From: Phallusia mammillata
Lineage: Eukaryota
DNA length: 64,000 nucleotides
Direction: 5' to 3'
Assembly: GCA_965637545.1 (NCBI GenBank)
Contig: OZ281494.1
Location: 18,848,001 to 18,912,000, forward strand
The notes below the pieces were generated by a model. The model saw only the letters and a list, made by a program, of their open reading frames with translations. It was not told the DNA's origin and made no database searches. The position numbers and the translations under genes are program-made. Below, piece after piece: positions 13,979 through 56,388 of this stretch. Each line of letters starts with the position of its first letter. The first letter of the stretch is position 1.

Positions 13979-14547
13979 CTATAAGCTGCCTACATTTATG
14001 CCACGACTCGAAATATAATTGTCAATATACACACGAAAAGGCGCATATTTTACTTATTTTGTTTCCTCTTTACCTTCTTCTTCTGAAAGATTTGCAAGAT
14101 CACTGATAACTAAGTTTTCCAAATCTTTGTCTTCTTCATGCATTGTGTTTGCCGTGTCTTCCTGTTTTTCTAGAAAACATAATATTTAAAAATTTTACTG
14201 GTTGTACATTTCTCGAGGAATAAAATGAGTAAATTACCAGCAATGTCATTGTCTCCACGTGCGAATTTTCTTAAACGTCTGCAAAAAATGTCTTACGTTT
14301 TTCTCCAATGTGGGCAACAACAATGGCAATTATGTTGACACATTCGGCATTTAGTGACTAAAAGCATACACATTCTAATTTTGTTTGTTTATTAAATATA
14401 CTACCTTATGCGAAGGCAGGAAAATCGTCTTCGGAATGAGCGAACCAAGCGCCGCGCCAAACGCCGTGGGTAGACCCGCTTGGCGTCGCCAAAGTCAACG
14501 AACAACAAGAAGAGAACGACCAAAACTAGACAAGTCTTCAGTTTCAT
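13979..14547 (-). CDS. Cationic peptide precursor 1 (AMP-like): signal peptide + KRVYPRRLARRLVRSFRRRFSCLRIRRLRKFARG + acidic tail
   Basis: Exons 14405-14547, 14238-14278, 14074-14169, 13979-13989 join in phase (2,1,1). ATG directly follows an acceptor (cag|ATG). Signal MKLKTCLVLVVLFLLFVDFGDA is paralogous to copies 2-4. Tail DNDIAEKQEDTANTMHEEDKDLENLVISDLANLSEEEGSL. The last mini-exon is least certain. Not in the ORF track. Confidence 0.75.
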
Positions 14548-15122
14548 CTGAAACATTGAAACAGTTTAGAATACAATAGATAATGAACACCGCTTTACCA
14601 AATTACAAAAACTTACCTCTGATTACTTGGTTCCACAAGATGAATGTAATTCAACGTATTACCATCACCGTTTTTATGGACATCTACATTCCGTACGTGG
14701 GACAAGAATAAGAAACAAATGAACTTATCTCAACACACAATTTGTGGGCAGTACCGTGGGTTATTGTAGCCTACGCACGATTTAATGTGCATATTTATTT
14801 TTGTTCGGATGTTTTCTGTTGTACATTTAACTCCCGATTTGCATGAGTGTATCTGAGTTTACAAAACATTCAAAAAATTTAAGACCAAAATTGCATGTGG
14901 GTATTTGTTTAAAGTATACAAAACATTATTACATTTTTTAAAACAATTGTCACATGTGGGTACATCTTATATAAGCTGTCGCATTAAACTGTTCTATAGT
15001 TTGTCCAACAAGAAACTCAAACTATTGCAATGTTTATTCATGAAAGCGCACGAACAAATTTGCCACTTGTTTTTAAAAAATGAAACGGAAAACAAAATAT
15101 CAAGTTATGTCATAATCTAAAC

Positions 15123-15592
15123 CAGTGGTTCTCAACCGGGGGTCCGCGGACCCCTGGTGGTCCGCCACGCGTTTTCAGGGGGTCCGCGACAACTTCTTAA
15201 TTAACACAAAACGAGATTATTAAATCGCAAATTGAAAAAAAAACGCTTTGGCATTTAAAAAATAGCATGAAACTTGTTTGAAAACATTCTTCGTAGGCAA
15301 CAAACTACAATGCATTATGACATCTAAACCCCATTGTGATGAAACAGACGTAAATTGTTAGTGGAAAAAACGTCATATTACACTGTAATGGCTCTTTCTT
15401 GTTGATTCCCGTTGTCGTAACCCAGAAAAAGGGATTAAAATTTTGGTCCTGGACCAAATGTGGTTGTAACTTTGCACCATGTTTGGTTGCTCGTAAATAA
15501 AAATGAAAAAAAAACCTAAAACTTCTAAGGGGTCCGCAATTAGATTACAGCACCGAAAAGGTCCGCAAAGTTAAAAAGATTGAGAACCACTG
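15123..15592. mobile_element. hAT MITE
   Basis: TIR CAGTGGTTCTCAA / TTGAGAACCACTG; 8-bp TSD ATCTAAAC. Confidence 0.9.
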
Positions 15593-17380
15593 ATCTAAAC
15601 TGAACTAAAAACTGCAGTTCAACGGGTGTTTGTTCGATTGGCTATTTGTATGAAGAACTTAAATGCTGCCAATCGTGTAAGCGTTATGCACTAAAAATTA
15701 AAAGACAGAAACACAGTCCGGCATCAAGTTTTATGTCAAGTGGAGTAGATATATGTTTGGAATATCTTTGGCTAAATATGTACTTCTCATTGTACATTTT
15801 TCCGGATTTTCCACGACAAAGGGAAAATCATTGATGGCAGAAGATAATTTTTCGGTCTGGGGTGCGTTATGCTGGTAGTACCTATACCTCCAGTGTTTTT
15901 TTAAGGTGTTAAATTTCTCCAGCGGTTTCCCAAAATTTGCCAGTAGCCTAATAAATATTTCGTTTAAGCAAATATGGCTATTTTTTTGGTATTTAAATGA
16001 AACACTTGCGGTCTCTTAAAACTACTTAGCGGTCACCCAAACCAAACCTTAAAAAAACCCTGGCCTACCTCAATATTTTGAAAACTGTCGGTCGACACCG
16101 ACTCCAGATGTTATTGCAACACAATTGTTTGTGTCGTTAAGCGAATGAAATTATAAGGCAAAAAAGCGATTCACATGTCTAGCACTAATTATTAGCATCG
16201 TTGCAACGAATATTTTGTTTAATTTCATTGATTACATTAGCCATGTGTGTCAGTTTTTCCTGTATAATGAAACACAATCAATACATGCCTAAAGACTTTG
16301 TTAAAAAGTGCTTAGTGGCAACAGACAGTATAACAAAGACCCACAAACGTTTTATTTCAATGTTCGAATAAAATTTAAGAGAAACACCTAAATAGAACTT
16401 TAAGTAATCACTGCAAGTATCTCTTACGTATCGGATATCGAATCGGATACTTTTTGTGCAAAATAGCGGGAATACTAGGTTTGAATTCAGAAAAAAAAAC
16501 TTAGCCGTAACGCTTACATTTTCGATTGGAAACCCAAACCCAACATCATGATCGCTTTTTTTAACTAAATTGCAAAATGTCGAAACGTATTTTTCAAAAA
16601 CAGACTCTTTCAATGTAGAAATAGCGTTCTGAATCCGGTTTTACACTGTGTTTTGACTGGAACAAACCGATTTTCACACGTTTTACATTAACCGAGTTCT
16701 GATCCCGAAAAACTTTTTTTGTTCTTTGATCCATCATCTGCTCCTAACTCTCTTTTATTTGGTGTGAGAGTTTTACTTAATTCTTATGTTGTTGTTTTTT
16801 ATTTTACTGCATTTTATAAGCAAATTAAAAAGATGGACCAAACAACAAAATCAAGTAAAACTAGTTTTGACGCAAGAGAGGAAGTGAGATAGTAACACTT
16901 CATCTGCAAACATGTTTTAGCATTGTATGATCGCAATAATATTGACTGTCGGTTTGTATGAAAATTTCAAGTTTGACAAATAAACCCCGAAACTTGTTTC
17001 TGGATAAAAGTAGATGAGTGAAATGAATCACTGCCGAAAAATGAACACATGACAAAAATGATAAGCATCGTGTTTTTATTTCAAACTGGTAAACTGTCAC
17101 CCATTGACATGATCCAGTTGATTCTTGGCGACACTTTCAGTCTGCACAAAACAGGTTTAATGTTATTTCCTTGTATTTTTTTGCTAGTCGTTGTATAAAA
17201 TCATAAATGTAACTTAGGTACACAAGACACGGACTTAAATAGTAGCTTTACTGGAAACAAACTGCCAGCGAAGTAGAATAAATAAATGTAACTTTTCTTT
17301 GCATCGAATCTATTTTTTAACTTTTTTATCGTGTCAAAAATTCCGAAATTTATTACATACACAAAAAAGCACCTTCTAAC

Positions 17381-17890
17381 TTAGTTTTCTTCCTCCATTT
17401 TTTCCAAAAAGTCCATTGGATCATCGGCAAAATCTGGATCTTCCTCAAAATTTATCTCTTCAACATCTTCTCCTTGCTCTAAGATATATTTTAATTGTTT
17501 TACTGTTGTTCACGTTACAAGCAAAACCCGTAAAATACCTGGCATTTTGTCCTGTTCATCTTTCCCGAAAAGCCTGGAAAAAAATTATTAATTATTATAC
17601 GTTTTGCTAAAATGCTTACAACCACAAGAGATAGAATACTGCAGAATTAGGATAAAAGTCGCAACTGGATTGTTTTTTAGTTCGATAAATCTATGCTACC
17701 TTCTGCGGCGGAAAAACAATCGTCGGCGCCGGTGAATCCAACCAATCGATCGACGCCGAAAACGCCAAATCGAGCGACGCCGATGACGCCAAATTCGGCG
17801 ACGCCAAAAACGCCTTCGAATTAGCGAGTTCCCGAAATCAATCACCAACAAGAAGAGTAGTAGCAAGCATAGACATGTCTTCACCTTCAT
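17381..17890 (-). CDS. Cationic peptide precursor 2 (AMP-like, Arg/Trp-rich)
   Basis: Exons 17700-17890, 17539-17573, 17381-17478 in phase (2,1). MKVKTCLCLLLLFLLVIDFGNS | LIRRRFWRRRIWRHRRRSIWRFRRRSIGWIHRRRRLFFRRRRLFG | KDEQDKMPEQGEDVEEINFEEDPDFADDPMDFLEKMEEEN*. Probable non-coding first exon near 17955-17990, with a TATA-like TATATAAA (minus strand) near 18011-18018. Confidence 0.85.
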
Positions 17891-18445
17891 CTGAAACGGT
17901 ATTGTACAGTTAGATAACCAAAAATGACCATCACTTTAGCATTTTTTAAACTTACGTTTGACTTGTTGGTTTCACAAGTCGACTACAATCCAATGTGTTG
18001 CCACCGTCGTTTATATACATATTTATACTTCCACACGAAAACACCAATGCAACCTATTACAACAAACATTTGGTGGGTTGTTCCGTCAAGTTTTGTTGTT
18101 TTACCAATAGATGTTATAAAGTTTGTAACAATAACCATGTTTTTCAAGTCAAAACTTAATGTGGGCACTTGTTTTTTCCTGTTGTAACGAAGTTTGCCTA
18201 GAAATACTTATATTAGTTCATGAAAAAGAAACAAATGAATGAAGGGATGCCCCTCAAAAATACCATGGTAAGACCCTAAAAAGCCTAAAAAATGTGGACA
18301 ATATATTTCTTAGCTGTTCATTCAGTTTGACACGTGATGTGAAAACATCCGTCGATCTGATTTCGGGCCTTAGATTTACATTCAAACTGTATTCAAATTT
18401 ACCGACAATTGGAAGTGTGATAATTGCCATTATTATAGTTCCTTT

Positions 18446-19618
18446 TAGTGGTGCACCGAAGTTTCGGTTGGCCGAAACATTTCGGCCGAATACGCTGTTT
18501 TCCGATGTTTCGGTTTCGGCCCGAACTTTTTTTGAAAATTCGGCCGAAACCGAACTTTTTGATTGCATGGAATTAATGCCTAAACCAAGGTTCTTCAACG
18601 GGGGCGATTTCGTCTACCGAGGGGGCGATGGTGGCAATTTTGGAAGTTAGGGGGCGATTTGACTTCAAAAGGGGGCGATTTCAACATTACTGATAGTATA
18701 AATATGCACCATATCTGTGAGACTCACCTAACTTTGACTTACAAGCAGATATAATTCGTCTTGCAAACAAACACCAGGGACAATGGACACGTCAGATTAA
18801 ACATGCTGCTATTTGAATACATTGTGATCTCGAAACCAATGTTAGGCATTTAATTAGCCACAGGGAACACTTTATTGTGGCTATGTATGGTGACAGGCCA
18901 TACTTTAAATACAACGGTAACGAACTTTACCTCGAACTGTTTTCGCTTTTACACTACCTATAGGCCTACAAGCGCTTCCCAAACCGCGAAGTATTTGAAT
19001 CATTTAGGATTCACCTCTACCGAGTAATGCCCTATTGTTGTCAACAAAAGAAAGCGATTGTTTGCGCATAATCGTAATATTGTTTTGTCTATGATGTTAC
19101 AAATTGTTTTCAGATGCGTTTTAATTGCGTGAAATGGACCTTGCGTGTTGTAGTTGCAATGAAATTAGGTTTTAACTGTTAACTGAATCTTTCGTGTTGC
19201 TGGAGAATCTAACTGCCTACATCTGCTCAAAAGGCAGAACTTTTATACAAATAACAATCTCATAGGGGGGCGATTTTGAGCCAGTGCCTTGGAAAGGGGG
19301 CGATTGAGCTAAAAATGTTGAAGACCCCTGGCCTAAACTATCATTTTCGCCTATGCGAAACGTAATAAATTAACTAATTGCTGCGTTTATAAAATACGAG
19401 CCTCAAATATTACAAGTTTAGTAAAACTTTCGCATTGTGAAAGTGATTTTGATTTAACATAATGCACTTCACTCGCATCAACGACGCAAGGTTCAGTTGG
19501 AAACATCCATATAAACGGGGATTTTAGGTTCGGCCTGATTCGGCCGAAATTATTCGGCCTCGTGGCCGAATATTCGGTTTCGGCCCGAACCTTTTCAGGC
19601 GGGTTCGGTGCATCACTA
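18446..19618. mobile_element. hAT MITE (same family as 7122-7619) carrying a nested MITE
   Basis: TIR TAGTGGTGCACCGAA / TTCGGTGCATCACTA; TSD GTTCCTTT (18438-18445, 19619-19626). Confidence 0.85.
18586..19330. mobile_element. Nested hAT MITE
   Basis: Ends CAAGGTTCTTCAAC / GTTGAAGACCCCTG; TSD GCCTAAAC; subterminal GGGGGCGAT repeats. Confidence 0.85.
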
Positions 19619-20029
19619 GTTCCTTTAACAAATGGTTTAATTTGTAAACACTACTGTCGTGACAAACACGTGAGATTAGCATACGCCACTGGAGTTTGAA
19701 AATACTAAGTTTGATGCCATATGCGATTAATTTTATCAAAAGTTAACAGGCCAATACAAGAATTCAAGGTTTAACACTTAGTGTGCCAAGTTCAAAATCC
19801 TTATTTTGTTTAATATGCAGAGCATTGATGGTATTTAAATTTATTGTCAGTCGGTTCTATCACCAAAGTTTTATTTTTCAGTCGGTTCTGTTACAAAAAG
19901 TCCACTGACAGTAACCAATTGTTTAACACAGTGGCACGCTTTTTAGGGCACGTTAAGTAAGACAGAATATTGTATTCAAGTAATCTGTAATTTGAACCCT
20001 TAAAATGCAGCCAACAAGACACTGTATTA

Positions 20030-20146
20030 CTTTTTTTTAACGGGGTTCAAACCCAGGACACTCGTGGGGACGAATCCCGATCAAGGGTTTGTTTCATGTC
20101 TGTTACATAAGTCAGGCGCGCCAGACCATTCGTCCAAGTTCCTGCC
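20030..20146 (-). mobile_element. Short tRNA-derived SINE with poly(A) tail
   Basis: Minus strand GGGCAGGAACTTGGACGAATGG...GGGTTTGAACCCC + A-tail, with A-box and B-box-like motifs. 15-bp TSD CAAGACACTGTATTA (20015-20029, 20147-20161). Homologous to 34527-34765. Confidence 0.8.
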
Positions 20147-21860
20147 CAAGACACTGTATTATATACCAAGAAGGGAAAATCTACTACAACAACATACCTC
20201 ACGGCAGCCCCACATTCCGCTAAATTGTGATATGTGGCGCTAAAGCGACAGTAACCTATATAAAACAGTGTATCTCTAAAAATACTTGGTTGTATCATTA
20301 AAAGTTCAATAAAAACAACTTTAAGACTTAGTTCTTCATGGAAAATTTTCAAATACTTACTTCCCAGCCCTATTTTTTCTAGCAGCTAAATCAGTAATTC
20401 CGCTCTTGGCGTTTTAACTAACTTTCGAGTAGTAGCGGAAAGAGCTGAATTGTTTATTTCGCAGCCAAGGTAGGTTAGAAAGTATTTTTTGTTAAAATTT
20501 TGTGCATAGAAACTTAGTGTTAAAGTTAGTTTTATTGTATTTTAAATAATAATAATACCTGACCCCACTCCAAAAAGCATAGCTATAGTCAGCATGTTTA
20601 GAGATATGTCGTTTTAAATGCGTCTTAGTGCTCTTTGCTCCATCGGAATTTAGCGTAATGTGGGACTGTCGAGGTTTGGTGCTAGTAGATTTTTCGATAA
20701 GTTACCACTTATTTCTAAATTAGAATCCAACGGAAACGAAGCTTATTGGAAACATGTCTGTGTTTTGCCCAAACAAATATTTTGCAACAGTAGGATATGT
20801 TGCTTTATCCTTTTCTTAGATTTTAAAACTTATTTTGTTTTTTGCTAATGTTTATATGACGTGACTTATAAGATTACGCCGCTACAATTTTGTTTTTTTT
20901 GTTCACTTTACAAATTTCCATCAAGGTATTTACTTTTCCTTCTCTGTAGTAACTAGACAACACCAGATTCTAGTATTACATTTTGGAGAGATTGAATTAT
21001 TTGGGGTTTTTGTTTGGGTTTGGGGCATCAGGTACACCAAGTGCACTTAAAGACGTTTTTCTGCATGTTTGGGTAGTTTTGATAATTCCTGGCAATTGTT
21101 TGTCTTTTTGCGCATGGGTTTATGCGTTTATTCGTTTCCCCAATGGACACCCAACACTGAAAACGAAGATAATGTAAAAAAATCCTTTATGTAACGCACA
21201 AGCCCAACAACTCATTTTGTTTTGAAATAGTTACAACTGTAAATATATTTGTACTTTACATAATTACGAGCGGGTATTTTTTGTTCAGTTATCGGGTTTG
21301 CGCGGTATATGGGGAGTAGGTTTGTTTTTCCAGGTTAAAAAAATATTTGTGCGTAAGGTGTAGGTTGCTATTTTAACACTCTGTTATTTTGGTAGGGATA
21401 CAGGTTTGTTCTGACGTTGTTATTTTGCGAGACGGTTTATTTTGATTCGGTACAGATTTATTACGCCACGCTTGTTTGTATTTGAAATTGACTGCAATGT
21501 GTTCTAACGGTTTAGCCACTTGAAATTCGTTTGAGAAATGTCATATAGCTGCCTTTAACCTGTGTTCAACAATAAAAAGAAGTTGCTGCCCCATCGTGTA
21601 TTTATTTTGATCATAATTTTATCACAATATTTTGGAGATCGTCTTCCCTGTCAGAAGTCATTTTCTGTAAAAACATAAACAATTAATCAACAGCTAAATA
21701 AGCATATTATAGCACGCTCAATCACCAACAACAGGAAGCCAACATTTTAACACGTTTGCTTCTAACACAAGTAGAATTAGATTTTATACGTCTTTACTGA
21801 GCTACGGTTTTTATTAAGCTATCGTACAGCTAAACGTACCTTTAAATTTTTCTCTTAAAT

Positions 21861-22425
21861 TTATTCGGTAAGTTTATTCTCTTCTACTTCAAGCAGATCA
21901 TTAATATCATCTGAATCATCAGGAAGACTCTCGAACTCTTTGTCTTCTTCAAGTTTTACGTCTTCGTTGTCATCTTCGTTTTCTATTTGTTACATTAAAA
22001 AGAACAGACCCGCTACGCTTAAAAGTGGCCTAATACGCAAAAATGGAAATACTAAATGAGCTTGGCACACATTTTACGAGAGAGTGATCAATAACTTAAA
22101 TTGATCACTTTGTAGCAAGATTACCTAAATATTGACGGGTGTAGACCATATCAGATTTACCTGAGATAAAGTTGTCTTTTCCAGTCCTGTGTAAGCAAAA
22201 CATAATTTGTAGCAATGGTATTAGTAGCACATAGTTTCAGATAAAAACTTTAAAGACTTGCCTGCTGCGGCGGCGGTAGTAACAGCGTCGACGGTAGTAC
22301 GGTGTTCGACGTCTGTAGATTACAATACGTCTTCGACTTCTTCGTCGCCAAAAAAGCAATGAGTCACTCAGATCAACTACCAAAAGAAAAAGCACAAGGA
22401 GGGAGACGCACGTCTTGATTTTCAT
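21861..22425 (-). CDS. Cationic peptide precursor 3 (AMP-like, Arg/Tyr-rich)
   Basis: Exons 22262-22425 (GC donor AG|GCAAGT), 22161-22186, 21861-21982. MKIKTCVSLLVLFLLVVDLSDS | LLFWRRRSRRRIVIYRRRTPYYRRRCYYRRRSRTG | KDNFISENEDDNEDVKLEEDKEFESLPDDSDDINDLLEVEENKLTE*. Confidence 0.85.
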
Positions 22426-22574
22426 CTGTAAACGCAAACAAATAGTATATTACACTTTAACGTTTATAAACTACAAGCAAATTTCACTTAAAAATACATG
22501 TTTTGTTATTAAACCTACCTTGTTTGATCAACCTTCGCTGTACCAAACTGTGCAAAGTTTACATTGACAGCTAC

Positions 22575-22585
22575 TTATATAGCAT
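22575..22585 (-). promoter_or_regulatory. TATA-like box of precursor 3 (equivalent site ~27177-27185 for precursor 4)
   Basis: GCTATATAAG on the minus strand, ~25-60 nt upstream of a probable non-coding exon ending in CAAG|gtaggt near 22519. Confidence 0.45.
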
Positions 22586-23440
22586 TCAAATCAAACCGAA
22601 ATATCCAATCAGCCGTTGAGAAGTAAAATCCAAACGTGTTGGCGTTTCCCTCTCTTCCGTGCCCAAATAGGCAGCCTGCCTTAAAATCGCAAACAAATCC
22701 GGTTTTGGGTGTTTATCCGCACAACCCACTGCAATTTTTAGCGTGAAGATAGTTTTACCGGATAAGCGATGTATTTATATTCCGTAGGCAAGAACAGTGG
22801 GTGCGTCCTTTGTGAACCCGCACCATCCTTAGTTGATTTCAAATCATCCACCTACTGTAGAAATCCTTCTTGTGACAGCTGTTGTTGTAACAAGCTTTTG
22901 CGAGTGAGCAATATCGAGATAAAATATTGCAATCAAGTATTTTGATTAATTAAACCTTTAAGTCTTCTTGGGGGTTATTGCGGGCTGCAGCGGGCCGATT
23001 GACATTAAAAATACACGCGAGGGCCACATAGCATGCAAGCCCGAACGCAGCGCTGTTCCAAAGCTGTGCTTCGCGTAGATCTTTTGTGGAATCTAAAGAA
23101 GCTCAATGGCTTACTACAATCTTATTTAGAGTCATATAGTGCTACTGTCAAAACGTAAAATTCTGTGCCATATTCAAGAGTCTCCTCTATTGGCAATATT
23201 TATTTATTTTCATCGCAATTAACCAAACAAAACATTGGTTCGTACAATAGCGAAGGCATTAATATATTTAGTCCTGCTGTGATGTAACAAACTGTCTTTC
23301 GAACGTTTTTCTTCGTTCTGTAAAACAAGGGGAAATTAATCCTATAGGTATACATATTGTTGCGGGAACACTTACATTAGAAATAGTTAACGCAAGATTA
23401 TTTTTTTTGAGATTTATGGCAAGATAAAAGGCCTTCGCGG

Positions 23441-24029
23441 CAGAGTTGCAAGTCGGGCCGGGCTTTTCGGGCCGGGTTCGGGCCGGGTTCAGGCCGGGTT
23501 CGGGCCGGGTTCGGGCCGGGTTCGGGCCGGGTTCGGGCCGGGTTCGGGCCGGGTTCGGGCCGGGTTCGGGTTCGGGCCGGGTTCGGGCCGGGTTCGGGCC
23601 GGGTTCGGGTTCGGGCCGGGTTCGGGCCGGGTTCGGGCCGGGTTCGGGCCGGGTTCGGGCCGGGTTCGGGCTTAGGTATTTGTGAGAAAACGGGCTTAAA
23701 ACGGGCCTGACTTTAGGTTCCGTGCCCGCCATTGTTTTTTAAATAAAATCATTCAACTAAGTAACGATTCTCTGGCTTTGACCTAATGCCCACCCTCCTC
23801 TAAAACGTATTGTTTACCCCATTGTCTACTATTGTTCATTGTGTTTGTTGCCTTTCTCTTTTTTTTTCTCATCCTTTGTTGCAAGGCTTTCTTGGATAGG
23901 CCCGTCAATCAAAATTTCGGGCCTAAACGGGCTTTGCAAAAACGTTTCGGGTTCGGGTCGGGCTTCGGGCTTATACTTTCGGGTTCGGGCCGGGTTCGGG
24001 CTCAGATTTCGGGCCCGCTTGCAACTCTG
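23441..24029. mobile_element. hAT MITE containing a GGGCCGGGTTC tandem array
   Basis: TIR CAGAGTTGCAAG / CTTGCAACTCTG; TSD CTTCGCGG. Absent from duplicate unit B, which has a single CTTCGCGG at ~28033-28040. Confidence 0.9.
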
Positions 24030-26466
24030 CTTCGCGGGCCGGATAAGATGACGTCGCGTGCTGGATCTGGCCCACGCGCCGCGGGTCGTAGTTTGGGGCA
24101 CCTGGCTACAGAGTGTATAGGAAAAACCGAAATGTTACTTCCAGAAAAATTGAAGTGCAAATGAGGCGGCTTAAAACAACTTGCTGGGGAACAAAATTGT
24201 CATTGACTTGATGACAATAGTTTTGTCAAATCGTTTAAACTTTACAGTTGAATACTATTTTTGCGACATCCAAAGACGATTCTGTTCGTGGTTAAGAATG
24301 TTTTAGGTTTCTGAAAGTACTACAAGTCCCCTAAATATAATGCAAAACATGCAGAAACATCAAAACATCTGGATACTTTTGCTGCAAATATTGTGCGATT
24401 GCACCCACCAAAGGCTTGTAGATTACATATAATGGGCAAAAAATATGTCAAGACATGGATATACGAAAGCTGTGTTGGAAACAGCATAGGCCCAGCCCAT
24501 TTCAATTGAGAGAAGGGACACAAAACTTGATAAATATTTAACATGGCATTAATTTAAGTCCACGACTTTTCTTACGATCTTATGAACCAAGCCTGCTTAC
24601 TTAATTTGCAACCGGTCCAGAATCCTGCAATCACGGCTCACCACTAAAGCCAATTATACTCCCTCACACTGGTTTAGCCTATGGGCGCGACTTATATTTA
24701 AAACAATGTAAAAGCAAAGTTACACCGAGCACGTGGCAACCCACCACCAATACCAACAACAACACCACTACGTTTCACGGCGCCCAGAGAAAAGCCCTAT
24801 CAACGACTAGCGACGCGCTATTTTAGGCATGTGGAACAAGAAGGCACATTCCGGCGCAATCAACGCCTTGCAAACCAATCACCCCTAAGGGGAAGCAGCG
24901 AGGGTGCCACAACACAAAAACGTAATTAAGGTGCCACAACGAAAAAGAACGAAAACAAAAAGTGACGGTGACAAAAAATCAACAAGCAAATAAAATTTCG
25001 CTACAGTAGCCCAAAGAGCTGAATTGTTTATTTCGCAGCCGAGGTAGGTTAGAGTTAGAAAGTAATTTTTTAAAAAAATTGTGTATAGAAACTTAGTGTT
25101 AAAGTCAGTTTTATTGTATTTTAAATAATAATAATACCTGACCCCATTCCAAAAAGCATAGCTATATAGTCAGCATGTTTAGAGATATGTCGTTTTAAAT
25201 GCGTCTTAGTGCTCTTTGCTCTACCTATCGGAATTTAGCATAATGTGGGACTGTCGAGGTTTGGTGCTAGTAGCTTTTTCGATAAGTTACCACTTATTTC
25301 TAAATTAGAATCCAGCGGAAACGAAGCATATTGGAAACATGTCTGTGTTTAGCCCAAACAAATATTTTGCAACAGTAGGATATGTTGCTTTATCCTTTTT
25401 GTGCTAAACACCTTACTTAGATTTTAAACTTATTTTGCGTTTGTTTTTTGCTGATGTTTATATGACGTGACTTATAACATTACGCCGTTACATTTTTGTT
25501 TTTTTGTTCACTTTACAAACTTCCGTCAAGGTATTTATTTTTCTTTCTCTGTAGTAACTAGACAACACCAGATTCTAGTATTACATTTTGGAGAGATTGA
25601 ATTATTTGGGGTTTTGTTTGGGTTTGGGGCATCAGGTACACCAAGTGCACGTAAAGACGTTTTTCTGCATGTTTGGGGCAGTTTTGATAATTCCTGGCAA
25701 TTGCTTGTCTTGTTGCGCATGGGTTTATGCGTTTATTTGTCGCCGCGATGGACATCCAAAACTGAAAACGAAGATAACGAAAAATTCCTTTATGTAAAGC
25801 ACAAGTCCAACAAATCATTTTGTTTTGAAATAGTTACAACTGTAAATATATTTGTACTTTACATAATTACGAGCGGGTATTTTTTGTTCAGTTATCGGGT
25901 TTGCGGGGTATATGGGAAATAGGTTTGTTTTTCCAGGTTAAAAAAAATATTTGTGCGTAAGGTGTATGTTGCTAAACTTTATCACTCTGTTATTTTGGTA
26001 GGGATACAGGTTTGTTCTGACGTTGTTATTTTGCAAGACGGTTTATTTTGATTCGGTACAGATTTATTACGCCACGCTTGTTTGTATTGGAAATTGACTG
26101 CAATGTGTTCTAAAGGTTTAGCCACTTGAAATTCGTTTGAGAAATGTCATATAGCTGCCTTTAACCCGTGTTCAACAATAAAAAGAAGCTGCTGCCCCGT
26201 CATGTATTTATTTTGATCATAATTTTATCACAATATTTAGGAGATCGTCTTCCCTGTCAGAAGTCCTTTTCTGTAAAAACATAAACAATTAATCAACAGC
26301 TAAATAAGCATATTATAGCACGCTCAATCATCAGCAACAGGAAATCAACATTTTAACACGTTTGCTTCTAACACAAGTAAAATTAGATTTTATACGTCTT
26401 TACTGAGCTACGGTTTTAATTAAGCTATCGTACAGCTAAACGTACCTTTAAATTTTTCTCCTAAAT

Positions 26467-27028
26467 TTATTCGGTAAGTTTGTTCTCTTCTACTTCAAGC
26501 AGATCATTAATATCATCTGAATCATCTGGAAGACTCTCGAACTCTTTGTCTTCTTCAAGTTTTACGTCTTCGTTGTCATCTTCGTTTTCTATTTGTTACA
26601 TTAAAAAGAATAGACCCGCTACGCTTAAAAGTGGCCTAATACGCAAAAATGGAAATACTAAACGAGCTTGGCACACATTTTACGAGAGAGTGATCAATAA
26701 TTTAAATTGATCACTTTGTAGCAAGATTGCCTAAATATTGACAGGTGTAGACCATATCAGATTTACCTGAGATAAAGTTGTCTTTTCCAGTCCTGTGTAA
26801 GCAAAACATAATTTGTAGCAATGGTATTAGTAGCACATAGTTTCAGATAAAAACTTTAAAGACTTGCCTGCTGCGGCGGCGGTAGTAACAGCGTCGACGG
26901 TAGTACGGTGTTCGACGTCTGTAGATTACAATACGTCTTCGTCTTCTTCGTCGCCAAAAAAGCGAGTCACTCAGATCAACTACCAAAAGAAAAAGCACAA
27001 GAAGGGAGACGCACGTCTTGATTTTCAT
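26467..27028 (-). CDS. Cationic peptide precursor 4 (paralog of 3)
   Basis: Exons 26868-27028 (GC donor), 26767-26792, 26467-26588. Mature LFWRRRRRRRIVIYRRRTPYYRRRCYYRRRSRTG; signal peptide and tail identical in protein to copy 3. Confidence 0.85.
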
Positions 27029-29417
27029 CTGTAAACGCAAACAAATAGTATATTACACTTTAACGTTTATAAACTACAAGCAAATTTTACTTAAAAATAC
27101 ATGTTTTGTTATTAAACCTACCTTGTTTGATCAACCTTCGCTGTACCAAACTGTGCAAAGTTTACAATAGCAGCTACTTATATAGCATTCAAACTAAACC
27201 GAAATATCCAATCAGCCGTTGAGAAGTAAAATCCAAACGTGTTGGCGTTTCCCTATCTTCCGTGCCCAAATAGGCAGCCTGCCTTAAAATCGCAAACAAA
27301 TCCGGTTTTGGGTGTTTATCCGCACAACCCACTGCAATTTTTAGCGTGAAGATAATTTTACCGGATGAGCGATGTATTTATATTCCGTAGGCAAGAACAG
27401 TGGGTGCATCCTTTGTGAACCCGCACCATCCTTAGTTGATTCCAAATCATCCACCTACTGTAGAAATCCTTCTTGTGACAGCTGTTGTTGTGACAACCTT
27501 TTGCGAGTGAGCAATATCGAGATAAAATATTGCAATCAAGTATTTTGGTTATGAACCTTGAGCCTTCTTGGAGGTTATTTCAGGCAACTGCGGGCCGGTT
27601 GGCATTAAAATTTACACGCGAGAGCCATATAGCATACAAGCCCGAACGCAGCGCTGTTCCAAAGCCGTGCTTCGCGTAGATCTTTTTTGGAATCAGAAGA
27701 AACTCAATGGCTTACTACAATCTTATTTAGAGTCATATGGTGCTACTGTCAAAACGTAAAATTTTGTGCCATATTCAAGAGTCTCCTCTATTGGCAATAT
27801 TTATTTATTTTCATCGCAATTAACAAAACAAAGACATTGGTTCGTACAATAGCGAAGGCATTAATATATTTAGTCCTGCTGTGATGTAACAAACTGTCTT
27901 TCGAACGTTTTTCTTCGTTCTGTAAAACAAGGGAAAATTAATCCTATAGGTATACATATTGTTGCGGGAACACTTACATTAGAAATAGTTTGGCAAGATT
28001 TATTTTTTATGAGATATATGGCAAGATAAAAGGCCTTCGCGGGCCGGATAAGATGACGTCGCGTGCTGGATCTGGCCCACGCGCCGCGGGTCGTAGTTTG
28101 GGGCACCTGGCTAGAGAGTGTATAGGAAAAAACGAAATGTTACTTCCAGAAAAATTGAAGTGCAAATGAGGCGGCTTAAAACAACTTGCTGGGGAACAAA
28201 ATTGTCATTGACTTGATAACAATAGTTTTGTCAAATCGTTTAAACTTTACAGTTGAATACTATTTTTGCGACATCCAAAGACGATTCTGTTCGTGGTTAA
28301 GAATGTTTTAGGTTTCTGAAAGTACTACAAGTCCCCTAAATATAATGCAAAAATATGCAGAAACATCAAAACATCTGGATACTTTTGCTGCAAATATTGT
28401 GCGATTGCACCCACCAAAGGCTTGTAGATTACATATAATGGGCAAAAAATATGTCAAGACATGGATATACGAAAGCTGTGTTGGAAACAGCATAGGCCCA
28501 GCCCATTTCAATTGAGAGAAGGGACACAAAACTTGATAAATATTTAACGTGGCATTAATTTAAGTCCACGACTTTTCAGTCTTAATCATCTTGCACTTTT
28601 ATAATCATGGAAAGCAGTATTTCTAAAACTGCTTGAATTAAGGTCGAACGGACAGAGCTTCAAACGAAGAACCATGACTATAGTCATTGCGTAACTTGAA
28701 ACCTACCTCGTCAGCGATGCTTACCAAAAACGCAAACTGCATACCAGCAGACAGCATTTCAAGAAAAATTACATCACTGTAGGCCTACATACGATCTGGC
28801 TTGTGAAATGCATAGTCAGTCTGACCACACCGACAGGAAGCATAGGCGTCATCTAATTTTTCCGATTATGTATGTTCGGTAAAACACAATTCATTTAAAT
28901 TTGGAAACAAGGCAAAGTATCAACTTATGACCATTAACAAAAACGATGTAGACGTCATATTTGCCACACGTAACGCCATGTATTATAAAGCATTTTGTTG
29001 TATGTGCTGCAGTGTGTTTTCGAAAAAATGCCGCAAAATGATATGCCCCAAACCGTAGCACTTTGTAGTCCTGCAAATCCATTGTCATTTTAATGCCGAC
29101 GGTTAACTGTTTTTGCCTTCTTCTTCCTGTTTATGCTGTGCTTTTGTGGAACGCGAAGCATTTGCATACCGTACAGTGCCATATACTATCTATATAAGTT
29201 TAGTTTTCTTCCAACTGGTGTAATGTCCACAAATTACCCGTTTATAGTAAACTCATTAATTGTTGACGGTATCACGTTACCAACCTAATGTCCCTCACTT
29301 AATTAACGTCATGATGACAAGTAAGCTGGCATGAATGCTGGACTTAACATCCATTACTGAGGGATTATGTTTGCCTTATGCTGGTCAGCAGCGCCGAAAA
29401 GTTTGCCGACCCGTGTG

Positions 29418-29639
29418 NNNNNNNNNNNNNNNNNNNNNNNNNNNNNNNNNNNNNNNNNNNNNNNNNNNNNNNNNNNNNNNNNNNNNNNNNNNNNNNNNNN
29501 NNNNNNNNNNNNNNNNNNNNNNNNNNNNNNNNNNNNNNNNNNNNNNNNNNNNNNNNNNNNNNNNNNNNNNNNNNNNNNNNNNNNNNNNNNNNNNNNNNNN
29601 NNNNNNNNNNNNNNNNNNNNNNNNNNNNNNNNNNNNNNN
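29418..29639. other. Assembly gap (222 N)
   Basis: Run of N. Confidence 1.
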
Positions 29640-30092
29640 TTCATAACTGGGATCAGCCCTGAAGCGTCTATGCAGACCAGCGATTACGGCACACTCATCT
29701 ATAAATCACAGTACGCCAGGCCCATTGAAGGCGCCATACCGAATCAGCCGGTCACCAAGCATTCACCACCATATGGCAAGGCGTAGGCTAGAAAAATCTA
29801 GCCTGCGGTGGGATTCGAACCCACGACAGGAGTCTTTCCGGGACTCGCGCTCTACCAACTGAGCTACACAGGCTCAGTGGAGAATCCGCCGAAAGTCGAA
29901 TCACAAGCACCGTTGCCTGCCTCGTATGCTGCACATGTCAGCTTCGTAGTAGGGGATCGCCAGATTGACCAGTATCAGTTAAGATGAACATAAATTCATA
30001 ACTGGGATCAGCCCTGAAGCGTCTATGCAGACCAGCGATTACGGCACACTCATCTATAAATCACAGTACGCCAGGCCCATTGAAGGCGCCAT
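29640..30092. repeat. 355-bp-period unit: 98-bp exact direct repeat (29640-29737 = 29995-30092) enclosing a tRNA-like sequence
   Basis: Seen directly. A 22-nt inverted copy of 29946-29967 lies at 30096-30117, at the junction with the LINE. Confidence 0.9.
29800..29873 (-). ncRNA. tRNA-like Pol III unit (non-canonical; probably SINE/repeat-derived)
   Basis: GCCTGTG-TA-GCTC AGTTGGTA GAGC-GC-GAGTC CCGGAAA GACTC-CTGTC-GTGGG TTCGAAT CCCAC-CGCAGGC-T folds into a complete cloverleaf and is followed by TTTTT. C33 replaces U33, there is an extra base before the anticodon stem, and the GGA anticodon lacks a Ser-type long arm. Confidence 0.6.
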
Positions 30093-30117
30093 CGCCAATC
30101 TGGCGATCCCCTACTAC

Positions 30118-33580: not shown

Positions 33581-33640
33581 AAAACCTAAATAAGAGTATT
33601 ATTTCATTTATGCACTTGTATTCCTATATTAATGTCCCAT

Positions 33641-48023: not shown

Positions 48024-49024
48024 TCAGTCCCAGCATAATGATCGGCACATTTCGCAGCTAATTTTTAATTTTCGGATCAGTTTCTTTCTTCCGTTGCGAT
48101 TTCGTCTTCTACTTCGTCGTCTTGCTATTCTTTGTTTTCTCGTTTTAAATCTTCTACGTGACTTCTTTGTATTCTCTACAAGATAATTTTGAGCGTCAAT
48201 ACATAAAACTTTGTGTTGTAAAGAGGGCAGAATATCAGGAAACCGATCTGATTTTGAAGGGGTGATGGCCACTGGCGTCCTAATGTTTTGAAAATGCATA
48301 ACTTATAATTATTTGCTGGTTACGCTACTGATTGTGTTAACAATAACAATCTTCCATCTGCATGGCGTTTGTAATTTGCGGAGCAGTTAGGTGAGTAGAG
48401 CCGATACATAATTTAGGAAAACTGTATGTTTGTCGTATCATAGATCTCTAAACTTATGCATCTCACTTATACAATAATTGTACTTTTAAGTACATGTAAT
48501 TGTGTTAAAAACTCATAGTACAATAAAATAATCCACTTACCTTGGTCATCGATACTGCGTTTGGATAGCAAGCTTGTGTGACACCTGTCCACGATTAATT
48601 GACATTTAACTTTCAGCACTATGCCACAACCCTCCTTAAAAGTCTTTGCAAGTTGCTTGCTAAAATGCCAAAAAATAGGAGTTTACAACATACCAAATTA
48701 TACGGCTATCGACCTACAGGTTAAATGTGTGCACTTTATCACAAATTATACTGCATTAGGGACAGAATGATTATATTTTTATACAGCCTAAAAATTTACT
48801 ATTATATAAAGCAAGGATTACACCTTTTGCACTTGGCGTTTACTATGTAGAAACACATTTCCATTTTCCTCTTACCGTGTAAAAACCATTTTGTCAAGTT
48901 GATCGCTGTTTCTTTTCAGCTGCTTTGCCAGTTTGTTACCACGACGACGTCCTGCTACGCCTGACGCCACGCAAACCACAAGCATTATCACAAAAGTTAA
49001 CATTGCGTTTTTTGACAAAGACAT
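48024..49024 (-). CDS. Secreted, highly cationic 6-Cys protein (~140 aa), unknown family
   Basis: Exons 48876-49024, 48541-48659, 48024-48175 in phase (2,1). MSLSKNAMLTFVIMLVVCVASGVAG | RRRGNKLAKQLKRNSDQLDKMVFTRKQLAKTFKEGCGIVLKVKCQLIVDRCHTSLLSKRSIDDQENTKKSRRRFKTRKQRIARRRSRRRNRNGRKKLIRKLKISCEMCRSLCWD*. Synonymous changes against the pseudogene copy (CTT/CTG, ATA/ATT, CAA/CAG) support the frame. Confidence 0.8.
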
Positions 49025-53996: not shown

Positions 53997-55067
53997 CCAG
54001 CAGAATTTGACTGTTTGGAGACTAACTATAAGCACCTGCTAGACCAATAAACTATTTGAAATCAACTTAATCCAAAGAATAAAGGACGTTAATGAGTAAT
54101 GAATATCACCTTTGGTGCTCGTTGTATTCGTGATCGTGAGATTTAACGGAAGTGCGTTTCCTTCGAACAAAGGTTAGTACTTGGTTTAATCAGCAATTTC
54201 GATTTTCGAATGCTCTTTGTGACTTAGTATTTTACTAAACTGAACCTAGTGGTTTTCCCATGTATCAAAGATAAGTGTTTGTTATGTTTTTTTTCTAATG
54301 TAAAAACGCGTTTGCAATGTCCGTTCAAACTTTGCCCGAGAAAACATAGTTGTGTAGCTATATATTTGAGACCAGTTATAACTGGCACTATGCATAAAAT
54401 TACCCACGCGTTTGATTCAAATTCTTCTTGTGACGTAGTTCCCGCTCATCATATAATATTTCTATCGAACGTTGCTCTAAAGCTAACCGCAAACTAAAGT
54501 CGTCCCAGCATAAACTTAGAGGAAAATTTTTATCCGATTTGAGAGAAAAAAATTTATCGACGCACACAGAAGTCATTTAAAAAACCTTTAACTTAAATTT
54601 TTAATCAAAGTATTTCTAATTGCATCATAAAAGTTACAAGTTATATACTTATTATGGTTGTGGGTAAATGTTACTGGCGTATAAAATGGGATTACACCGG
54701 TATTATAACAGTTCGATTCAACATTAATGCGGACCTCCAGTTAAATTGCTGATTCAACAAAACATATTTTGGTAAGGAATTCGAATTTAAGTTTTGGAAA
54801 TGCTTTTGTGGAATTGATTATTGCTACAGATTCAGAAAAAATAAAATGTGCATTCAACAGACACCACAAAAGTTCTGAAACACGTGCAACGAGACCTATC
54901 AAGCTCAAGAAAAAGGCAATAAAAAAGGGAAAAAATATCTAGTGCTCGCGCAATACCTACGCCTAATCTGCTAAAACTTCTAAATGAAACGTTTTCTTTT
55001 AAAAAAAAAACGTTTTCTGCTAAAAGAAACGGTTTTATTTCTGGTTGGTTAAAGTCTTCTTTTAAAC

Positions 55068-55303
55068 CAGGTGTCGGCAACCTTTTTTACACTGCGGACC
55101 GGTTTTGAACCTGAAATTTTATCGCGGACCGGCCTTCGAAAAACTGCAAAATATTTAGCAACAAAAACGCTCAAATTAGTTTATCATCCCCAGGATGCAT
55201 GGGGAAAGTGTTTCAAAGCGTTTAACCTGAAAAAGTATACGGCCCGGTAACGAACTCCTCGCGGACCGGTACCGGGCCGCGGCCCGGCGGTTGCCGACCA
55301 CTG
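55068..55303. mobile_element. hAT MITE
   Basis: TIR CAGGTGTCGGCAACC / GGTTGCCGACCACTG; TSD TTTTAAAC. Confidence 0.88.
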
Positions 55304-55884
55304 TTTTAAACAACAATGCTTGCGTAATAAACGGGGCTCGGTTGAGTATTTATTATTTTTCTCTTGAGTGAAATTCATCTGTCTGCGGTCAGCTAATTTG
55401 GTGTCTACATTAATGAATGAATTCATAAATTCATATGAATTCATACAATATTACAATTTACTAGGGTGTGCCAAAAAGTTTGACAAAAAAACCTAAAAAA
55501 ATGAGTTTTGTGATTCGGTTTTGCACATATCTATTACCAATGAAAGGATAGTAAGTTATAATATATTTTTGGACACTTCGACGCGCATAGTGATGACCAA
55601 ATATGTACAAAGCACCTTTGTATGCATATTTCAACACTATAAACTGCAGCTGCCTCCTACACCTCAAAACATCCGATGGGACCTTGCCTATATTGGGACA
55701 TACATATCCGTTAAGTGATCAACAACAGTATGTAACAAATTGCCTGTAAAGATCATCGTCAAGACAGGACTTCGCACTGCAACACTATAAACGTAAGTTC
55801 ATTAAAATAATATTTAAATAAAATAGATAAATTCGGTGTTACTTTATACTGTGATCTGCAACTTTTGTAAACAATACCTTCCAG

Positions 55885-56388
55885 ATGAAAGCAGCCATAC
55901 TTCTTGCCATTTTGTGCACAGCCCTTCTGCTTTTGGAACAGAGCGTAGCCTGGAAGATACGAAGAATTCGTACATGGAGAAAACATAGAAAGTATGAGTG
56001 CTATCATCCCACAATTATTTTTTTTCTTTAACAATACACCCGTGTGGTGGCAAGTACCACGTTTTAAAACCTCTTTTGTATATTATAGATATATTTTTTG
56101 AACTATCAATATGGTTTATAGCTGGTTTCATCGTCGTCGCCGCCGCCGCCGTTGTTTCTTCGGCAAAGATGGAGCTTCACCACAAGAGACTAAATGGGGT
56201 AAGAAAAAGTTAAATGATATTCAGGTCGATTTTGGTTTGCATAGTGTATGCCATTTTGCTTAAAGCAACAGTAAAATACTGCTTTCTGTAACCTTCAATG
56301 TATTTTAGACATACATGTTGAAAACGAGTTTCCCGATCTGGGTGGGTTGTCAAAAGACATCACTGATGACAACAAAAACAGTTCCTAA
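55885..56388 (+). CDS. Cationic peptide precursor 5 (AMP-like, Arg/Trp-rich)
   Basis: Exons 55885-55991, 56122-56198, 56309-56388 in phase (2,1), with cag|ATG start. MKAAILLAILCTALLLLEQSVA | WKIRRIRTWRKHRNWFHRRRRRRRCFFG | KDGASPQETKWDIHVENEFPDLGGLSKDITDDNKNSS*. Not in the ORF track. Confidence 0.82.

What the first reader, a model, noticed from the sequence alone, without database searches (positions are those of the whole stretch)
13979..56388. Hidden five-gene family of Arg/aromatic-rich secreted peptide precursors with acidic tails (candidate new AMP family)
Seen: five genes (13979-14547, 17381-17890, 21861-22425, 26467-27028 minus; 55885-56388 plus) share one design. The ATG sits directly after a splice acceptor, followed by a 22-aa signal peptide, a 28-45 aa peptide with 12-22 Arg plus W/F/Y, then Gly (Gly-Lys-Asp in four), then an Asp/Glu-rich tail, with intron phases 2 then 1. 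Signal peptides 1-4 are clearly paralogous while the mature peptides are mostly unalignable. Established: tunicate AMP precursors (clavanins, styelins) use signal + cationic peptide + Gly amidation donor + anionic extension. Inference: this is a rapidly diversifying amidated AMP family. The mature sequences match no peptide I recall, and two of the five genes are absent from the ORF track.
Basis: partly seen in the sequence, partly recalled or inferred. Interest (0 to 1): 0.9.

Follow-up and report, generated by a model that had tools for sequence, protein, structure and literature searches.

The report
Sea-squirt arginine-rich secreted peptide genes
Five small spliced genes here encode secreted, extremely arginine-rich peptides followed by acidic tails; they are real, at least one is transcribed, and they belong to an unnamed family also present in the sea squirt Ciona that most likely makes antimicrobial peptides.

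Summary
All five three-exon models translate cleanly: a 22-aa signal, a 27-44 aa core with 12-22 Arg plus W/F/Y, then G-K-D (G-D in gene 1) and an acidic tail. Intron phases are 2 then 1, and the ATG follows a splice acceptor. The N gap (29418-29639) lies outside every model.

Transcript-like contigs from four studies join gene 2's exons exactly as modelled.

An exhaustive profile search of 1.84 billion proteins returned only Ciona proteins. All are "uncharacterized" and share the signal motif, the Arg/aromatic blocks, the G-D junction and the acidic tail. One Ciona gene has the same exon plan, with a 143-nt first coding exon, phase 2, then phase 1.

So the family is real and conserved among ascidians, but not wholly new. 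A 2020 Ciona screen (PMC7387483) synthesised a very similar peptide, KH.C7.94, and found it antimicrobial.

AMP function, amidation and "rapid diversification" remain inferred. The cores are not amphipathic helices. Gene 5 is only a distant member.

Earlier notes of this scan report similar clusters elsewhere in this genome; I could not compare them with this one.

The parts
14054..14547 (-). g1 coding region. Exons 14405-14547, 14238-14278 and 14054-14169; 99 aa. Signal MKLKTCLVLVVLFLLFVDFGDA, 33-aa core (14 R, +16), G-D junction, acidic tail (-12).
   Evidence: GT-AG introns, phases 2 and 1
13845..14617 (-). g1 full transcript model (ends approximate). The 5' non-coding exon ends at 14617. 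A 3'UTR intron spans 14053-13923. The last exon starts at 13922 (ACTGAAAGTGT...), with AATAAA at 13870.
   Evidence: The 3'UTR exon start is conserved with g2, where RNA contigs confirm it.
17381..17890 (-). g2 coding region. Exons 17700-17890, 17539-17573 and 17381-17478; 107 aa. 44-aa core (22 R, 9 W/F/Y, +22), LFGKD junction, tail -16.
   Evidence: Both coding introns are joined exactly, with 0 mismatches, in contigs of 4 runs from 4 studies.
16787..17141 (-). g2 last (3'UTR) exon, reached by splicing out 17142-17372. The donor lies 8 nt after the stop codon.
   Evidence: The loose end at 17373 maps to 17112-17141. Sequence; AATAAA at 16803.
17956..17990 (-). g2 5' non-coding exon (5' end not determined), with its GT donor at 17955. 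Only its last 6-9 nt (17961/17964-17956) appear in the mRNA contigs. An AG at 17963-17962 could be a trans-splice acceptor.
   Evidence: inference for trans-splicing
17744..17814 (-). A 24-nt tandem repeat, 3 copies, 83% matches, inside the g2 core. It encodes an 8-aa unit (RRRSIWRF-like).
21861..22425 (-). g3 coding region. Exons 22262-22425, 22161-22186 and 21861-21982; 103 aa. 34-aa core (16 R), TGKD junction, tail -17. The first coding intron has a GC donor.
   Evidence: No contig coverage in the 4 runs laid.
26467..27028 (-). g4 coding region. Exons 26868-27028, 26767-26792 and 26467-26588; 102 aa. A near-identical duplicate of g3: one Leu codon fewer, one S>R change and 3 synonymous changes.
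20487..28577 (.). Two copies of a tandem segmental duplication, each about 4.6 kb, carrying g3 and g4 (20487-24571 and 25066-28577; 88-99% identical blocks).
55885..56388 (+). g5 coding region. Exons 55885-55991, 56122-56198 and 56309-56388; 87 aa. 27-aa core (12 R), FFGKD junction, weakly acidic tail (-5). A distant member.

Best explanation
These are five members (four clear, one distant; two are a recent duplicate) of an ascidian gene family that encodes small secreted prepropeptides.

Proposed mechanism:
1. A 22-aa signal peptide takes the product into the secretory pathway.
2. The acidic C-terminal tail, of roughly equal and opposite charge, neutralises the very basic core during synthesis and storage.
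3. Cleavage at the conserved Gly-(Lys)-Asp junction releases a 27-44 aa peptide built of Arg3-4 blocks alternating with 2-4 hydrophobic or aromatic residues. The Gly probably serves as amide donor.
4. The released polycation most likely acts as a host-defence (antimicrobial) peptide. It would bind anionic microbial surfaces and possibly enter cells, in the manner of Arg/Trp-rich peptides rather than as an amphipathic helix.

Shown here: the gene models, splicing and transcription of g2, paralogy, and homology with Ciona genes that share the exon plan.

Inferred: secretion, the cleavage site, amidation and antimicrobial action.
For: - Models and composition.
- g2 introns joined exactly in contigs of four studies.
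- A profile of the first coding exons, searched against 1.84 billion proteins, returned only four hits. All are Ciona (E 2.6e-4 to 7.9e-4) and all have the same layout. Further searches added six more Ciona proteins.
- Profile-profile comparison gave 98.7% probability.
- The Ciona gene at L002:14737 has its ATG after cag, a 143-nt first coding exon ending in phase 2 inside an Arg codon, a 47-nt exon holding RCFYGD plus acidic residues and ending in phase 1, and an acidic last exon. That is the plan of g1-g4. LOC100177571 also has phases 2 then 1.
- Ciona members sit in tandem arrays, as g3 and g4 do here.
- Signals are conserved (64% identity, z about 10), cores are not (z 0.3-3.0), and tails are intermediate.
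- Literature, PMC7387483. Ciona AMP precursors run signal / cationic / anionic. Ascidian precursors are cut N-terminal to Asp. The synthetic KH.C7.94 core (SRRRFDFSRRRIYVARRRSLAFAHRRR, followed by FGDTA and an acidic tail) has MIC 6.25 uM on E. coli, S. aureus and yeast, and its mRNA was assayed by RT-PCR in haemocytes, where LPS left it unchanged.
Against: - No activity, peptide or tissue data exist for these genes.
- g3 was absent from the four transcript-like runs laid.
- g2 was present in all 16 such runs of four studies. That looks constitutive rather than induced, and the tissues are unknown to me.
- In the same Ciona paper, two other Arg-rich peptides (KH.L63.9, KH.S1007.2) had little or no activity on E. 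coli.
- The cores show no helical amphipathicity, unlike clavanins, styelins, Ci-MAM and Ci-PAP.
- Lys-Asp is not a classical convertase site.
Confidence: 0.6

Rival explanations
1. The proteins are not processed into free peptides. The polycationic Arg/aromatic block and the polyanionic tail act together, or with sulfated glycans, as a charge-driven condensing or coacervating material. Possible roles are packing granule contents, tunic or adhesive secretion.
For: - Core and tail charges nearly cancel in g1-g4.
- Arg plus Tyr/Trp/Phe favours cation-pi condensation (general knowledge).
- Two Ciona members lie among sulfotransferase genes.
- g2 mRNA is present in every transcript-like run found.
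Against: - A conserved Gly-Asp or Gly-Lys-Asp junction sits exactly between the two blocks in this genome and in Ciona. This fits a processing site better than a plain linker.
- The hypervariable core with a conserved signal is the pattern of defence peptides.
- The related KH.C7.94 core kills microbes.
Confidence: 0.15
2. They are precursors of amidated signalling peptides (neuropeptide or hormone-like), with Gly-Lys as the amidation and cleavage signal.
For: - The Gly-Lys motif after the core in four genes.
- Small secreted precursors with an intron plan conserved between ascidian genera.
Against: - Core sequences are unalignable even between neighbouring paralogues, and their length varies from 27 to 44 aa. 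That does not suit receptor ligands.
- 42-52% Arg is unlike known neuropeptides.
- Ciona relatives have Gly-Asp with no basic residue.
Confidence: 0.05
3. Only part of the cluster is functional. g2 is an expressed gene, while g3, g4 and perhaps g1 and g5 are silent copies on their way to decay.
For: - No contigs over g3 in four runs that all hold g2.
- g3 and g4 depend on a GC donor.
- The tail of g5 is only weakly acidic.
Against: - All five reading frames and all splice sites are intact.
- g3 and g4 kept intact frames across 3% divergence, with 3 synonymous changes, 1 non-synonymous change and one in-frame codon indel.
- The runs laid may simply lack the tissue or stimulus.
- Contigs show presence, not absence.
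Confidence: 0.2

Closest known systems
Ciona uncharacterized proteins: F6XW60 and LOC100177571 / A0A1W2WAY3, LOC144747755 and the C-terminus of LOC104266517 (C. intestinalis); H2ZHU7, H2ZHV0, H2YTP8, H2YTK0, H2YTK1 (C. savignyi)
   Same: - Signal ending L-V-[VI]-D-x-[SG]-[DE]-[SGA].
- Arg3-5 blocks spaced 4-9 aa with F/Y/W/I between them, usually one Cys.
- Gly-Asp junction and an acidic tail.
- ATG directly after an acceptor.
- A phase-2 intron in an Arg codon, then a phase-1 intron.
- Tandem arrays.

   Different: - The junction here is mostly Gly-Lys-Asp rather than Gly-Asp.
- Signals start MK[LVI]KTC.
- Cores here are longer in g2.
- The position of the phase-2 intron shifts between members.
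- No function is known for any of them.
Ciona LCAMP candidate KH.C7.94 (Ohtsuka & Inagaki 2020, PMC7387483)
   Same: - Core of RRR blocks separated by hydrophobic or aromatic residues, ending RRRFGD(TA), followed by an acidic tail.
- The same G-D-T-A junction as LOC100177571.
- Tested antimicrobial; mRNA assayed by RT-PCR in haemocytes.

   Different: Its signal starts MKRNAV, judged from the published primer.
- That screen excluded Cys-containing peptides, which removes most members seen here.
- The paper treats it as a helical LCAMP and does not define this family.
Clavanins and styelins (Styela clava); Ci-MAM and Ci-PAP (Ciona)
   Same: - Order: signal, cationic peptide, anionic C-terminal extension.
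- Cleavage N-terminal to Asp (PMC7387483).
- In clavanins a Gly before the acidic part gives a C-terminal amide (from memory).
   Different: - Those are amphipathic alpha-helical peptides with far less Arg. The cores here show no helical moment.
- Their published signal consensus sequences differ: MDRKIVFAL... for Ci-MAM and MNKSALL... for the second Ciona family.
- No sequence match was tested, because full sequences were not at hand.
Myticalins of mussels (Leoni et al. 2017, PMC5577615)
   Same: - Conserved signal, hypervariable Arg-rich linear core of 23-42 aa, frequent Gly amide donor, anionic tail.
- A 5'UTR intron right before the ATG, and a phase-1 intron in the tail.
   Different: - Molluscan, with a different signal (MKGxxLLLLTI...).
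- A Lys-Arg dibasic site, and a Pro/Tyr-rich core.
- Only one coding intron.
- Taken as convergent, not homologous.

Membership tests
Ciona Arg/aromatic block-repeat secreted proteins (F6XW60 / H2ZHU7 / LOC100177571 group; unnamed) | Detectable sequence similarity over the signal plus core | tested here: met
   The profile of window exons found only these Ciona proteins among 1.84 billion (E 2.6e-4 to 7.9e-4). hhalign gave 98.7%, though Arg-rich composition may inflate that figure.
Ciona Arg/aromatic block-repeat secreted proteins (F6XW60 / H2ZHU7 / LOC100177571 group; unnamed) | Layout: signal, Arg3-5 / hydrophobic-aromatic blocks, Gly-Asp junction, acidic tail | tested here: met
   Here the junction is G-D in g1 and G-K-D in g2-g5.
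Ciona Arg/aromatic block-repeat secreted proteins (F6XW60 / H2ZHU7 / LOC100177571 group; unnamed) | Exon plan: ATG at an acceptor, a phase-2 intron in an Arg codon, a short junction exon, a phase-1 intron | tested here: met
   Window. Ciona L002:14737: (first coding exon 143 nt, as in g1). LOC100177571. LOC144747755 departs from the plan, having only phase-1 introns.
Ascidian linear cationic AMP precursors (clavanin / styelin / Ci-MAM / Ci-PAP type) | Signal peptide, then cationic peptide, then anionic C-terminal extension | tested here: met
   The signal was judged by the h-region and the -3/-1 rule only; SignalP was not available.
Ascidian linear cationic AMP precursors (clavanin / styelin / Ci-MAM / Ci-PAP type) | Mature peptide is an amphipathic alpha-helix | tested here: not met
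   The hydrophobic moment at 100 degrees is not above shuffles in any core, and lies in the lowest 2-5% for g3 and g4. The AlphaFold2 helix on F6XW60 is low-confidence.
Ascidian linear cationic AMP precursors (clavanin / styelin / Ci-MAM / Ci-PAP type) | Antimicrobial activity of the released peptide | not testable with these tools
   Only indirect evidence: KH.C7.94 activity in PMC7387483.
Ascidian linear cationic AMP precursors (clavanin / styelin / Ci-MAM / Ci-PAP type) | Sequence homology to Ci-MAM or Ci-PAP signals | tested here: inconclusive
   Only the published consensus strings were at hand. The window signals do not resemble them. Ciona LOC100177571 starts MDRK like Ci-MAM, and H2YTP8 starts MNK like the second Ciona family.
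Myticalins | Conserved myticalin signal, Lys-Arg dibasic site, a single phase-1 coding intron | tested here: not met
   Compared with the description in PMC5577615: different signal, no dibasic site, two coding introns.

The most novel reading that the evidence does not exclude
The genes define a distinct, old ascidian family, shared by Ciona and this genome. Its products would be non-helical defence peptides built of Arg-block / aromatic repeats, released at a conserved Gly-Asp junction and often dimerised through their single Cys. They would act by a cell-penetrating or nucleic-acid-binding mode different from all named tunicate AMPs, and diversify by slippage of short coding repeats on either side of a fixed phase-2 intron.
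Probability: 0.3. Interest if true: 0.6.

Novelty: new member of a known kind. Interest (0 to 1): 0.45.

Why it matters
Tunicate antimicrobial peptides are few and were found one at a time. This work links unannotated genes in one ascidian with "uncharacterized" Ciona proteins through a shared signal, junction and intron plan. That gives a family-level handle: a signal-exon profile plus the exon plan.

With it, members can be found in other tunicate genomes, including the Cys-containing ones that a published Ciona screen discarded. It also supplies concrete peptides for synthesis and for salt-tolerant activity tests.

The result is useful rather than surprising. The precursor design is known, and a near relative has already been shown to kill microbes.

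Tried and rejected
- A word-index protein search with g2's first coding exon found nothing.
- A full-text search for eight core or signal strings, two UniProt accessions and one LOC gene identifier found no paper. Searches for Phallusia AMPs and for ascidian arginine-rich AMPs gave only general reviews.
- A 13-nt match to g2's last coding bases at 29200-29212, next to the N gap, is chance. No reading frame or family exon lies there.
- tblastn of the five proteins against the window found no further member or wreck. Weak hits led only to the 62270 gene and the 48-kb gene.
- Per-segment DNA identity with free end gaps was too noisy to use. I replaced it with protein scores against shuffles.
- g3 versus g4 for selection: too few changes to say anything.
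- AlphaFold2 on F6XW60 with a 3-sequence alignment gave mean pLDDT 59.6, which is uninformative.
- NF-kB-like sites: 4 in the window against 2 expected. One lies about 290 nt upstream of g2's 5' exon; this is not evidence.
- Synteny: no ORF of the three Ciona loci matches the window.
- The supplement of PMC7387483 gives only primers for KH.C7.94, not its sequence.
- The spliced full-length proteins were not submitted as typed letters, so several tools saw only first-exon translations.


Full report
**1. The observation**

Reading the five places and splicing them by script gives five intact three-exon reading frames of 87-107 codons. In every case:
- the ATG follows directly on a pyrimidine-rich tract and AG;
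- the first coding intron is in phase 2 and the second in phase 1.

All introns are GT-AG except the first coding intron of g3 and g4, which starts AG|GCAAGT, the usual form of a GC donor. The only nearby GT there leads to a short product with no acidic tail. The GC donor gives the G-K-D junction and a 47-aa acidic tail like the paralogues.

Each product has four parts:
- a 22-aa hydrophobic leader with small residues at -3 and -1;
- a core of 27-44 aa with 12-22 Arg (42-52%) and 4-9 W/F/Y, net charge +14 to +22;
- Gly-Lys-Asp (Gly-Asp in g1);
- a tail of 38-47 aa with net charge -5 to -17.

A scan of both strands for signal-like starts directly after an acceptor found only these five and one unrelated small gene at 62270. 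tblastn found no further copies or wrecks.

**2. The assembly gap**

The N run 29418-29639 lies more than 2 kb upstream of g4 and 26 kb from g5. No model or frame crosses it. On the side next to it that I examined lies a 355-nt repeat unit with a tRNA-Ser-like element. I did not try to fill it.

**3. Relations among the five**

g3 and g4 lie in a tandem duplication with copies of about 4.6 kb. They differ by about 3% everywhere. Within the coding sequence there are three synonymous changes, one Ser>Arg change and one Leu-codon indel at the signal/core border. That is too little to speak of selection.

Among g1, g2 and g3 (scores against shuffles):

| Region | Identity | z |
|---|---|---|
| Signal | 64% | about 10 |
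| Core | 32-41% | 0.3-3.0 (no better than composition-matched shuffles, except weakly g2-g3) |
| Tail | 25-40% | 1.6-4.7 |

g5 is a distant member: signal z is about 2.5, the FFGKD junction resembles g2's LFGKD, and the phases are the same. Its phase-2 intron sits mid-core.

g1 and g2 also share a 3'UTR intron and a conserved last exon beginning ACTGAAAGTGT. All five have a short non-coding exon with a GT donor 65-93 nt upstream of the ATG.

The g2 core contains a 24-nt tandem repeat of three copies, an 8-aa unit. This is a plausible source of length change.

**4. Expression**

Sixteen small, transcriptome-sized runs from four studies hold 41% of the sampled words of the g2 region. Two large runs hold 100%.

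I laid four runs, one from each of those four studies, on 17250-22700. Each has one contig that joins 17478 to 17539 and 17572/3 to 17699/700. These are exactly the two modelled coding introns, with no mismatches. The contig then:
- leaves the genome 8 nt after the stop at a GT;
- continues in sequence that maps to 17141 and downstream. This is a spliced 3'UTR.

So g2 is transcribed and spliced as predicted. g3 had no contig in these runs. Tissue and stage are unknown to me because run labels are coded.

The 5' end is unexplained. The contigs carry 38 nt before the ATG, of which only the last 6-9 nt match the local 5' exon. The rest is nowhere in the window. Its 3' part resembles the 16-nt Ciona spliced leader, but the contigs extend further 5' than a 16-nt leader would.

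**5. Relatives elsewhere**

A profile of the five first-exon translations (A1) was scored against 1.84 billion representative proteins. It gave only four hits below E = 1e-3, all from Ciona:
- H2ZHU7 and H2ZHV0 (C. savignyi);
- F6XW60 (C. intestinalis);
- the C-terminus of XP_078486381.1, a receptor model that has swallowed a family exon.

Searches seeded with these added H2YTP8, H2YTK0, H2YTK1, LOC100177571 / A0A1W2WAY3 and LOC144747755. All are called "uncharacterized".

They share:
- the end of the signal (L-V-[VI]-D-x-[SG]-[DE]-[SGA]);
- Arg3-5 blocks spaced 4-9 residues apart with F/Y/W/I between them;
- usually a single Cys;
- a Gly-Asp junction and an acidic tail.

Profile-profile comparison gives 98.7%. 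Composition may inflate that figure.

Gene structure supports the match:
- In Ciona locus L002, the F6XW60-like gene has its ATG after cag. Its first coding exon is 143 nt, the same length as g1's, and ends in phase 2 inside an Arg codon. A 47-nt exon encodes RCFYGDQEATEEQQQ and ends in phase 1. The last exon is acidic.
- LOC100177571 has phase 2 right after the signal and phase 1 in the tail.
- The three Ciona loci fetched hold 3, 2 and 2 members in tandem.

The phase-2 intron keeps its phase and nearly always splits an Arg codon, but its place in the core shifts. That fits growth of the repeat region on either side of it.

These hits, and the leader's likeness to the Ciona spliced leader, place the window in an ascidian.

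**6. What is published**

No paper in the library holds any of the core strings or accessions.

The closest work is Ohtsuka & Inagaki 2020 (PMC7387483). It reports that:
- most Ciona linear cationic AMP precursors run signal / cationic region / anionic pro-region;
- ascidian precursors are cut N-terminal to Asp (styelins, clavanins) rather than at dibasic sites.

Its candidate list includes KH.C7.94, FSRRRFDFSRRRIYVARRRSLAFAHRRRFGDTA plus an acidic tail. That is the same block design and the same G-D-T-A junction as LOC100177571. The synthetic core had MIC 6.25 uM on E. coli, S. aureus and S. cerevisiae. Its mRNA was among those assayed by RT-PCR in haemocytes and was not induced by LPS.

Two other Arg-rich peptides were weak or inactive. 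The screen discarded every Cys-containing sequence, which would remove most members seen here.

I could not obtain the full KH.C7.94 sequence, so its membership is likely but untested.

Myticalins of mussels (PMC5577615) have a strikingly similar design. Their signal, cleavage site and intron number differ, so I take them as convergent.

**7. Mechanism**

Best reading (0.6): secreted prepropeptides whose acidic tail masks the polycationic core until cleavage at Gly-(Lys)-Asp. The Gly probably becomes a C-terminal amide. The freed core acts as a host-defence peptide.

The cores are not amphipathic helices. The helical moment is no higher than in shuffles, and lies in the lowest 2-5% for g3 and g4. 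The AlphaFold2 model is low-confidence. The mode of action is therefore more likely that of Arg/aromatic-rich peptides than that of clavanin-like helices.

The single Cys in most members would allow disulfide dimers, as in halocidin and dicynthaurin (from memory). This is inference only.

Rivals:
- an unprocessed, charge-balanced condensing or adhesive protein (0.15);
- a signalling-peptide precursor (0.05);
- partial silence of the cluster, which is compatible with the main reading (0.2).

**8. Verdict**

The family is real and conserved, its layout is that of known ascidian AMP precursors, and a near relative is antimicrobial. It is not a wholly new family, and function, amidation and fast evolution are still inferred.

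Earlier notes of this scan (s1-375376, s1-408601, s1-388443) report similar clusters elsewhere in the same genome. I could not compare them with this one.

Noticed in passing
window 61945-62270 (-): A small two-exon gene starting cag-ATA-ATG. Its signal MAKASFAILLLLLLVIDLSES has the same L-V-I-D-L-S-E-S ending as this family. A phase-1 intron follows 3 residues later. The rest is a His/Asp/Gly-rich stretch (EGHHDGDHGW...) and a hydrophobic C-terminus that looks like a GPI or membrane anchor. It may be a family signal exon on a different body.
   Followed up: partly
window 48075-49024 (-) and 38454-38573 (-): Another secreted-protein gene starts MSLSKNAMLTFVIMLVVCVASGVAG at 49024, with an Arg/Lys-rich, Cys-bearing exon at 48075-48209. 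A copy of that exon at 38454-38573 carries stop codons and is probably a pseudogene fragment.
   Followed up: partly
window 17891-17990 (-), g2 5' end: The g2 mRNA contigs carry a 38-nt leader. Only the last 6-9 nt are local; the rest is absent from the window. The absent part ends like the ascidian spliced leader (ATTCTGTTAATAAG against Ciona ATTCTATTTGAATAAG), but the contigs run longer than a 16-nt leader.
   Followed up: partly
window 30050-34528 (-): A decayed LINE. ORF pieces match zinc knuckle, endonuclease (Exo_endo_phos), reverse transcriptase and zf-RVT, split by frame breaks.
   Followed up: partly
window 36538-37215 (-): An intronless 225-aa ORF with a clear class-I SAM methyltransferase domain (Methyltransf_11, E 5e-21). 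It is the only long conserved ORF in the window; its origin and expression were not examined.
   Followed up: no
window 29640-30111 and 29799-29874 (-): Next to the N gap lies a 355-nt-spaced direct repeat (94% identical). It contains a tRNA-Ser(GGA)-like element (Rfam 55 bits; ARAGORN), so this is probably a tRNA-derived repeat array. That may be why the assembly broke here.
   Followed up: partly
window 23440-23714: A GC-rich minisatellite with an 11-nt period (CGGGTTCGGGC-like, about 17-25 copies) lies inside the first copy of the g3/g4 duplication. Repeat spacing drops from about 4605 to about 4005 nt across it, so the second copy seems to lack about 600 nt here.
   Followed up: no
L002 10001-14895 (Ciona intestinalis AP043573.1): RefSeq model XP_078486381.1 (463 aa, 7tm_1 receptor) ends in a complete family signal plus Arg-rich exon (residues 412-463). 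This is almost certainly a gene-model fusion with the neighbouring peptide gene. An identical second copy lies 7.3 kb downstream.
   Followed up: partly
L003 (Ciona intestinalis AP043577.1): Two family members (10321 and 20103) are interleaved with three cytosolic-type sulfotransferase genes. This could be coincidence or functional linkage.
   Followed up: no
L004 9805-10011 and L005 718-924 (metagenome contigs, JGI 3300027611 and ENA ERZ27241786): A look-alike exon sits on eukaryote-like contigs: cag|ATG, signal ...FFLLVESEG, an Arg-block core, then NFG|gtaagc in phase 1. The match is weak (E 0.49). It may be the same family in another marine animal.
   Followed up: partly
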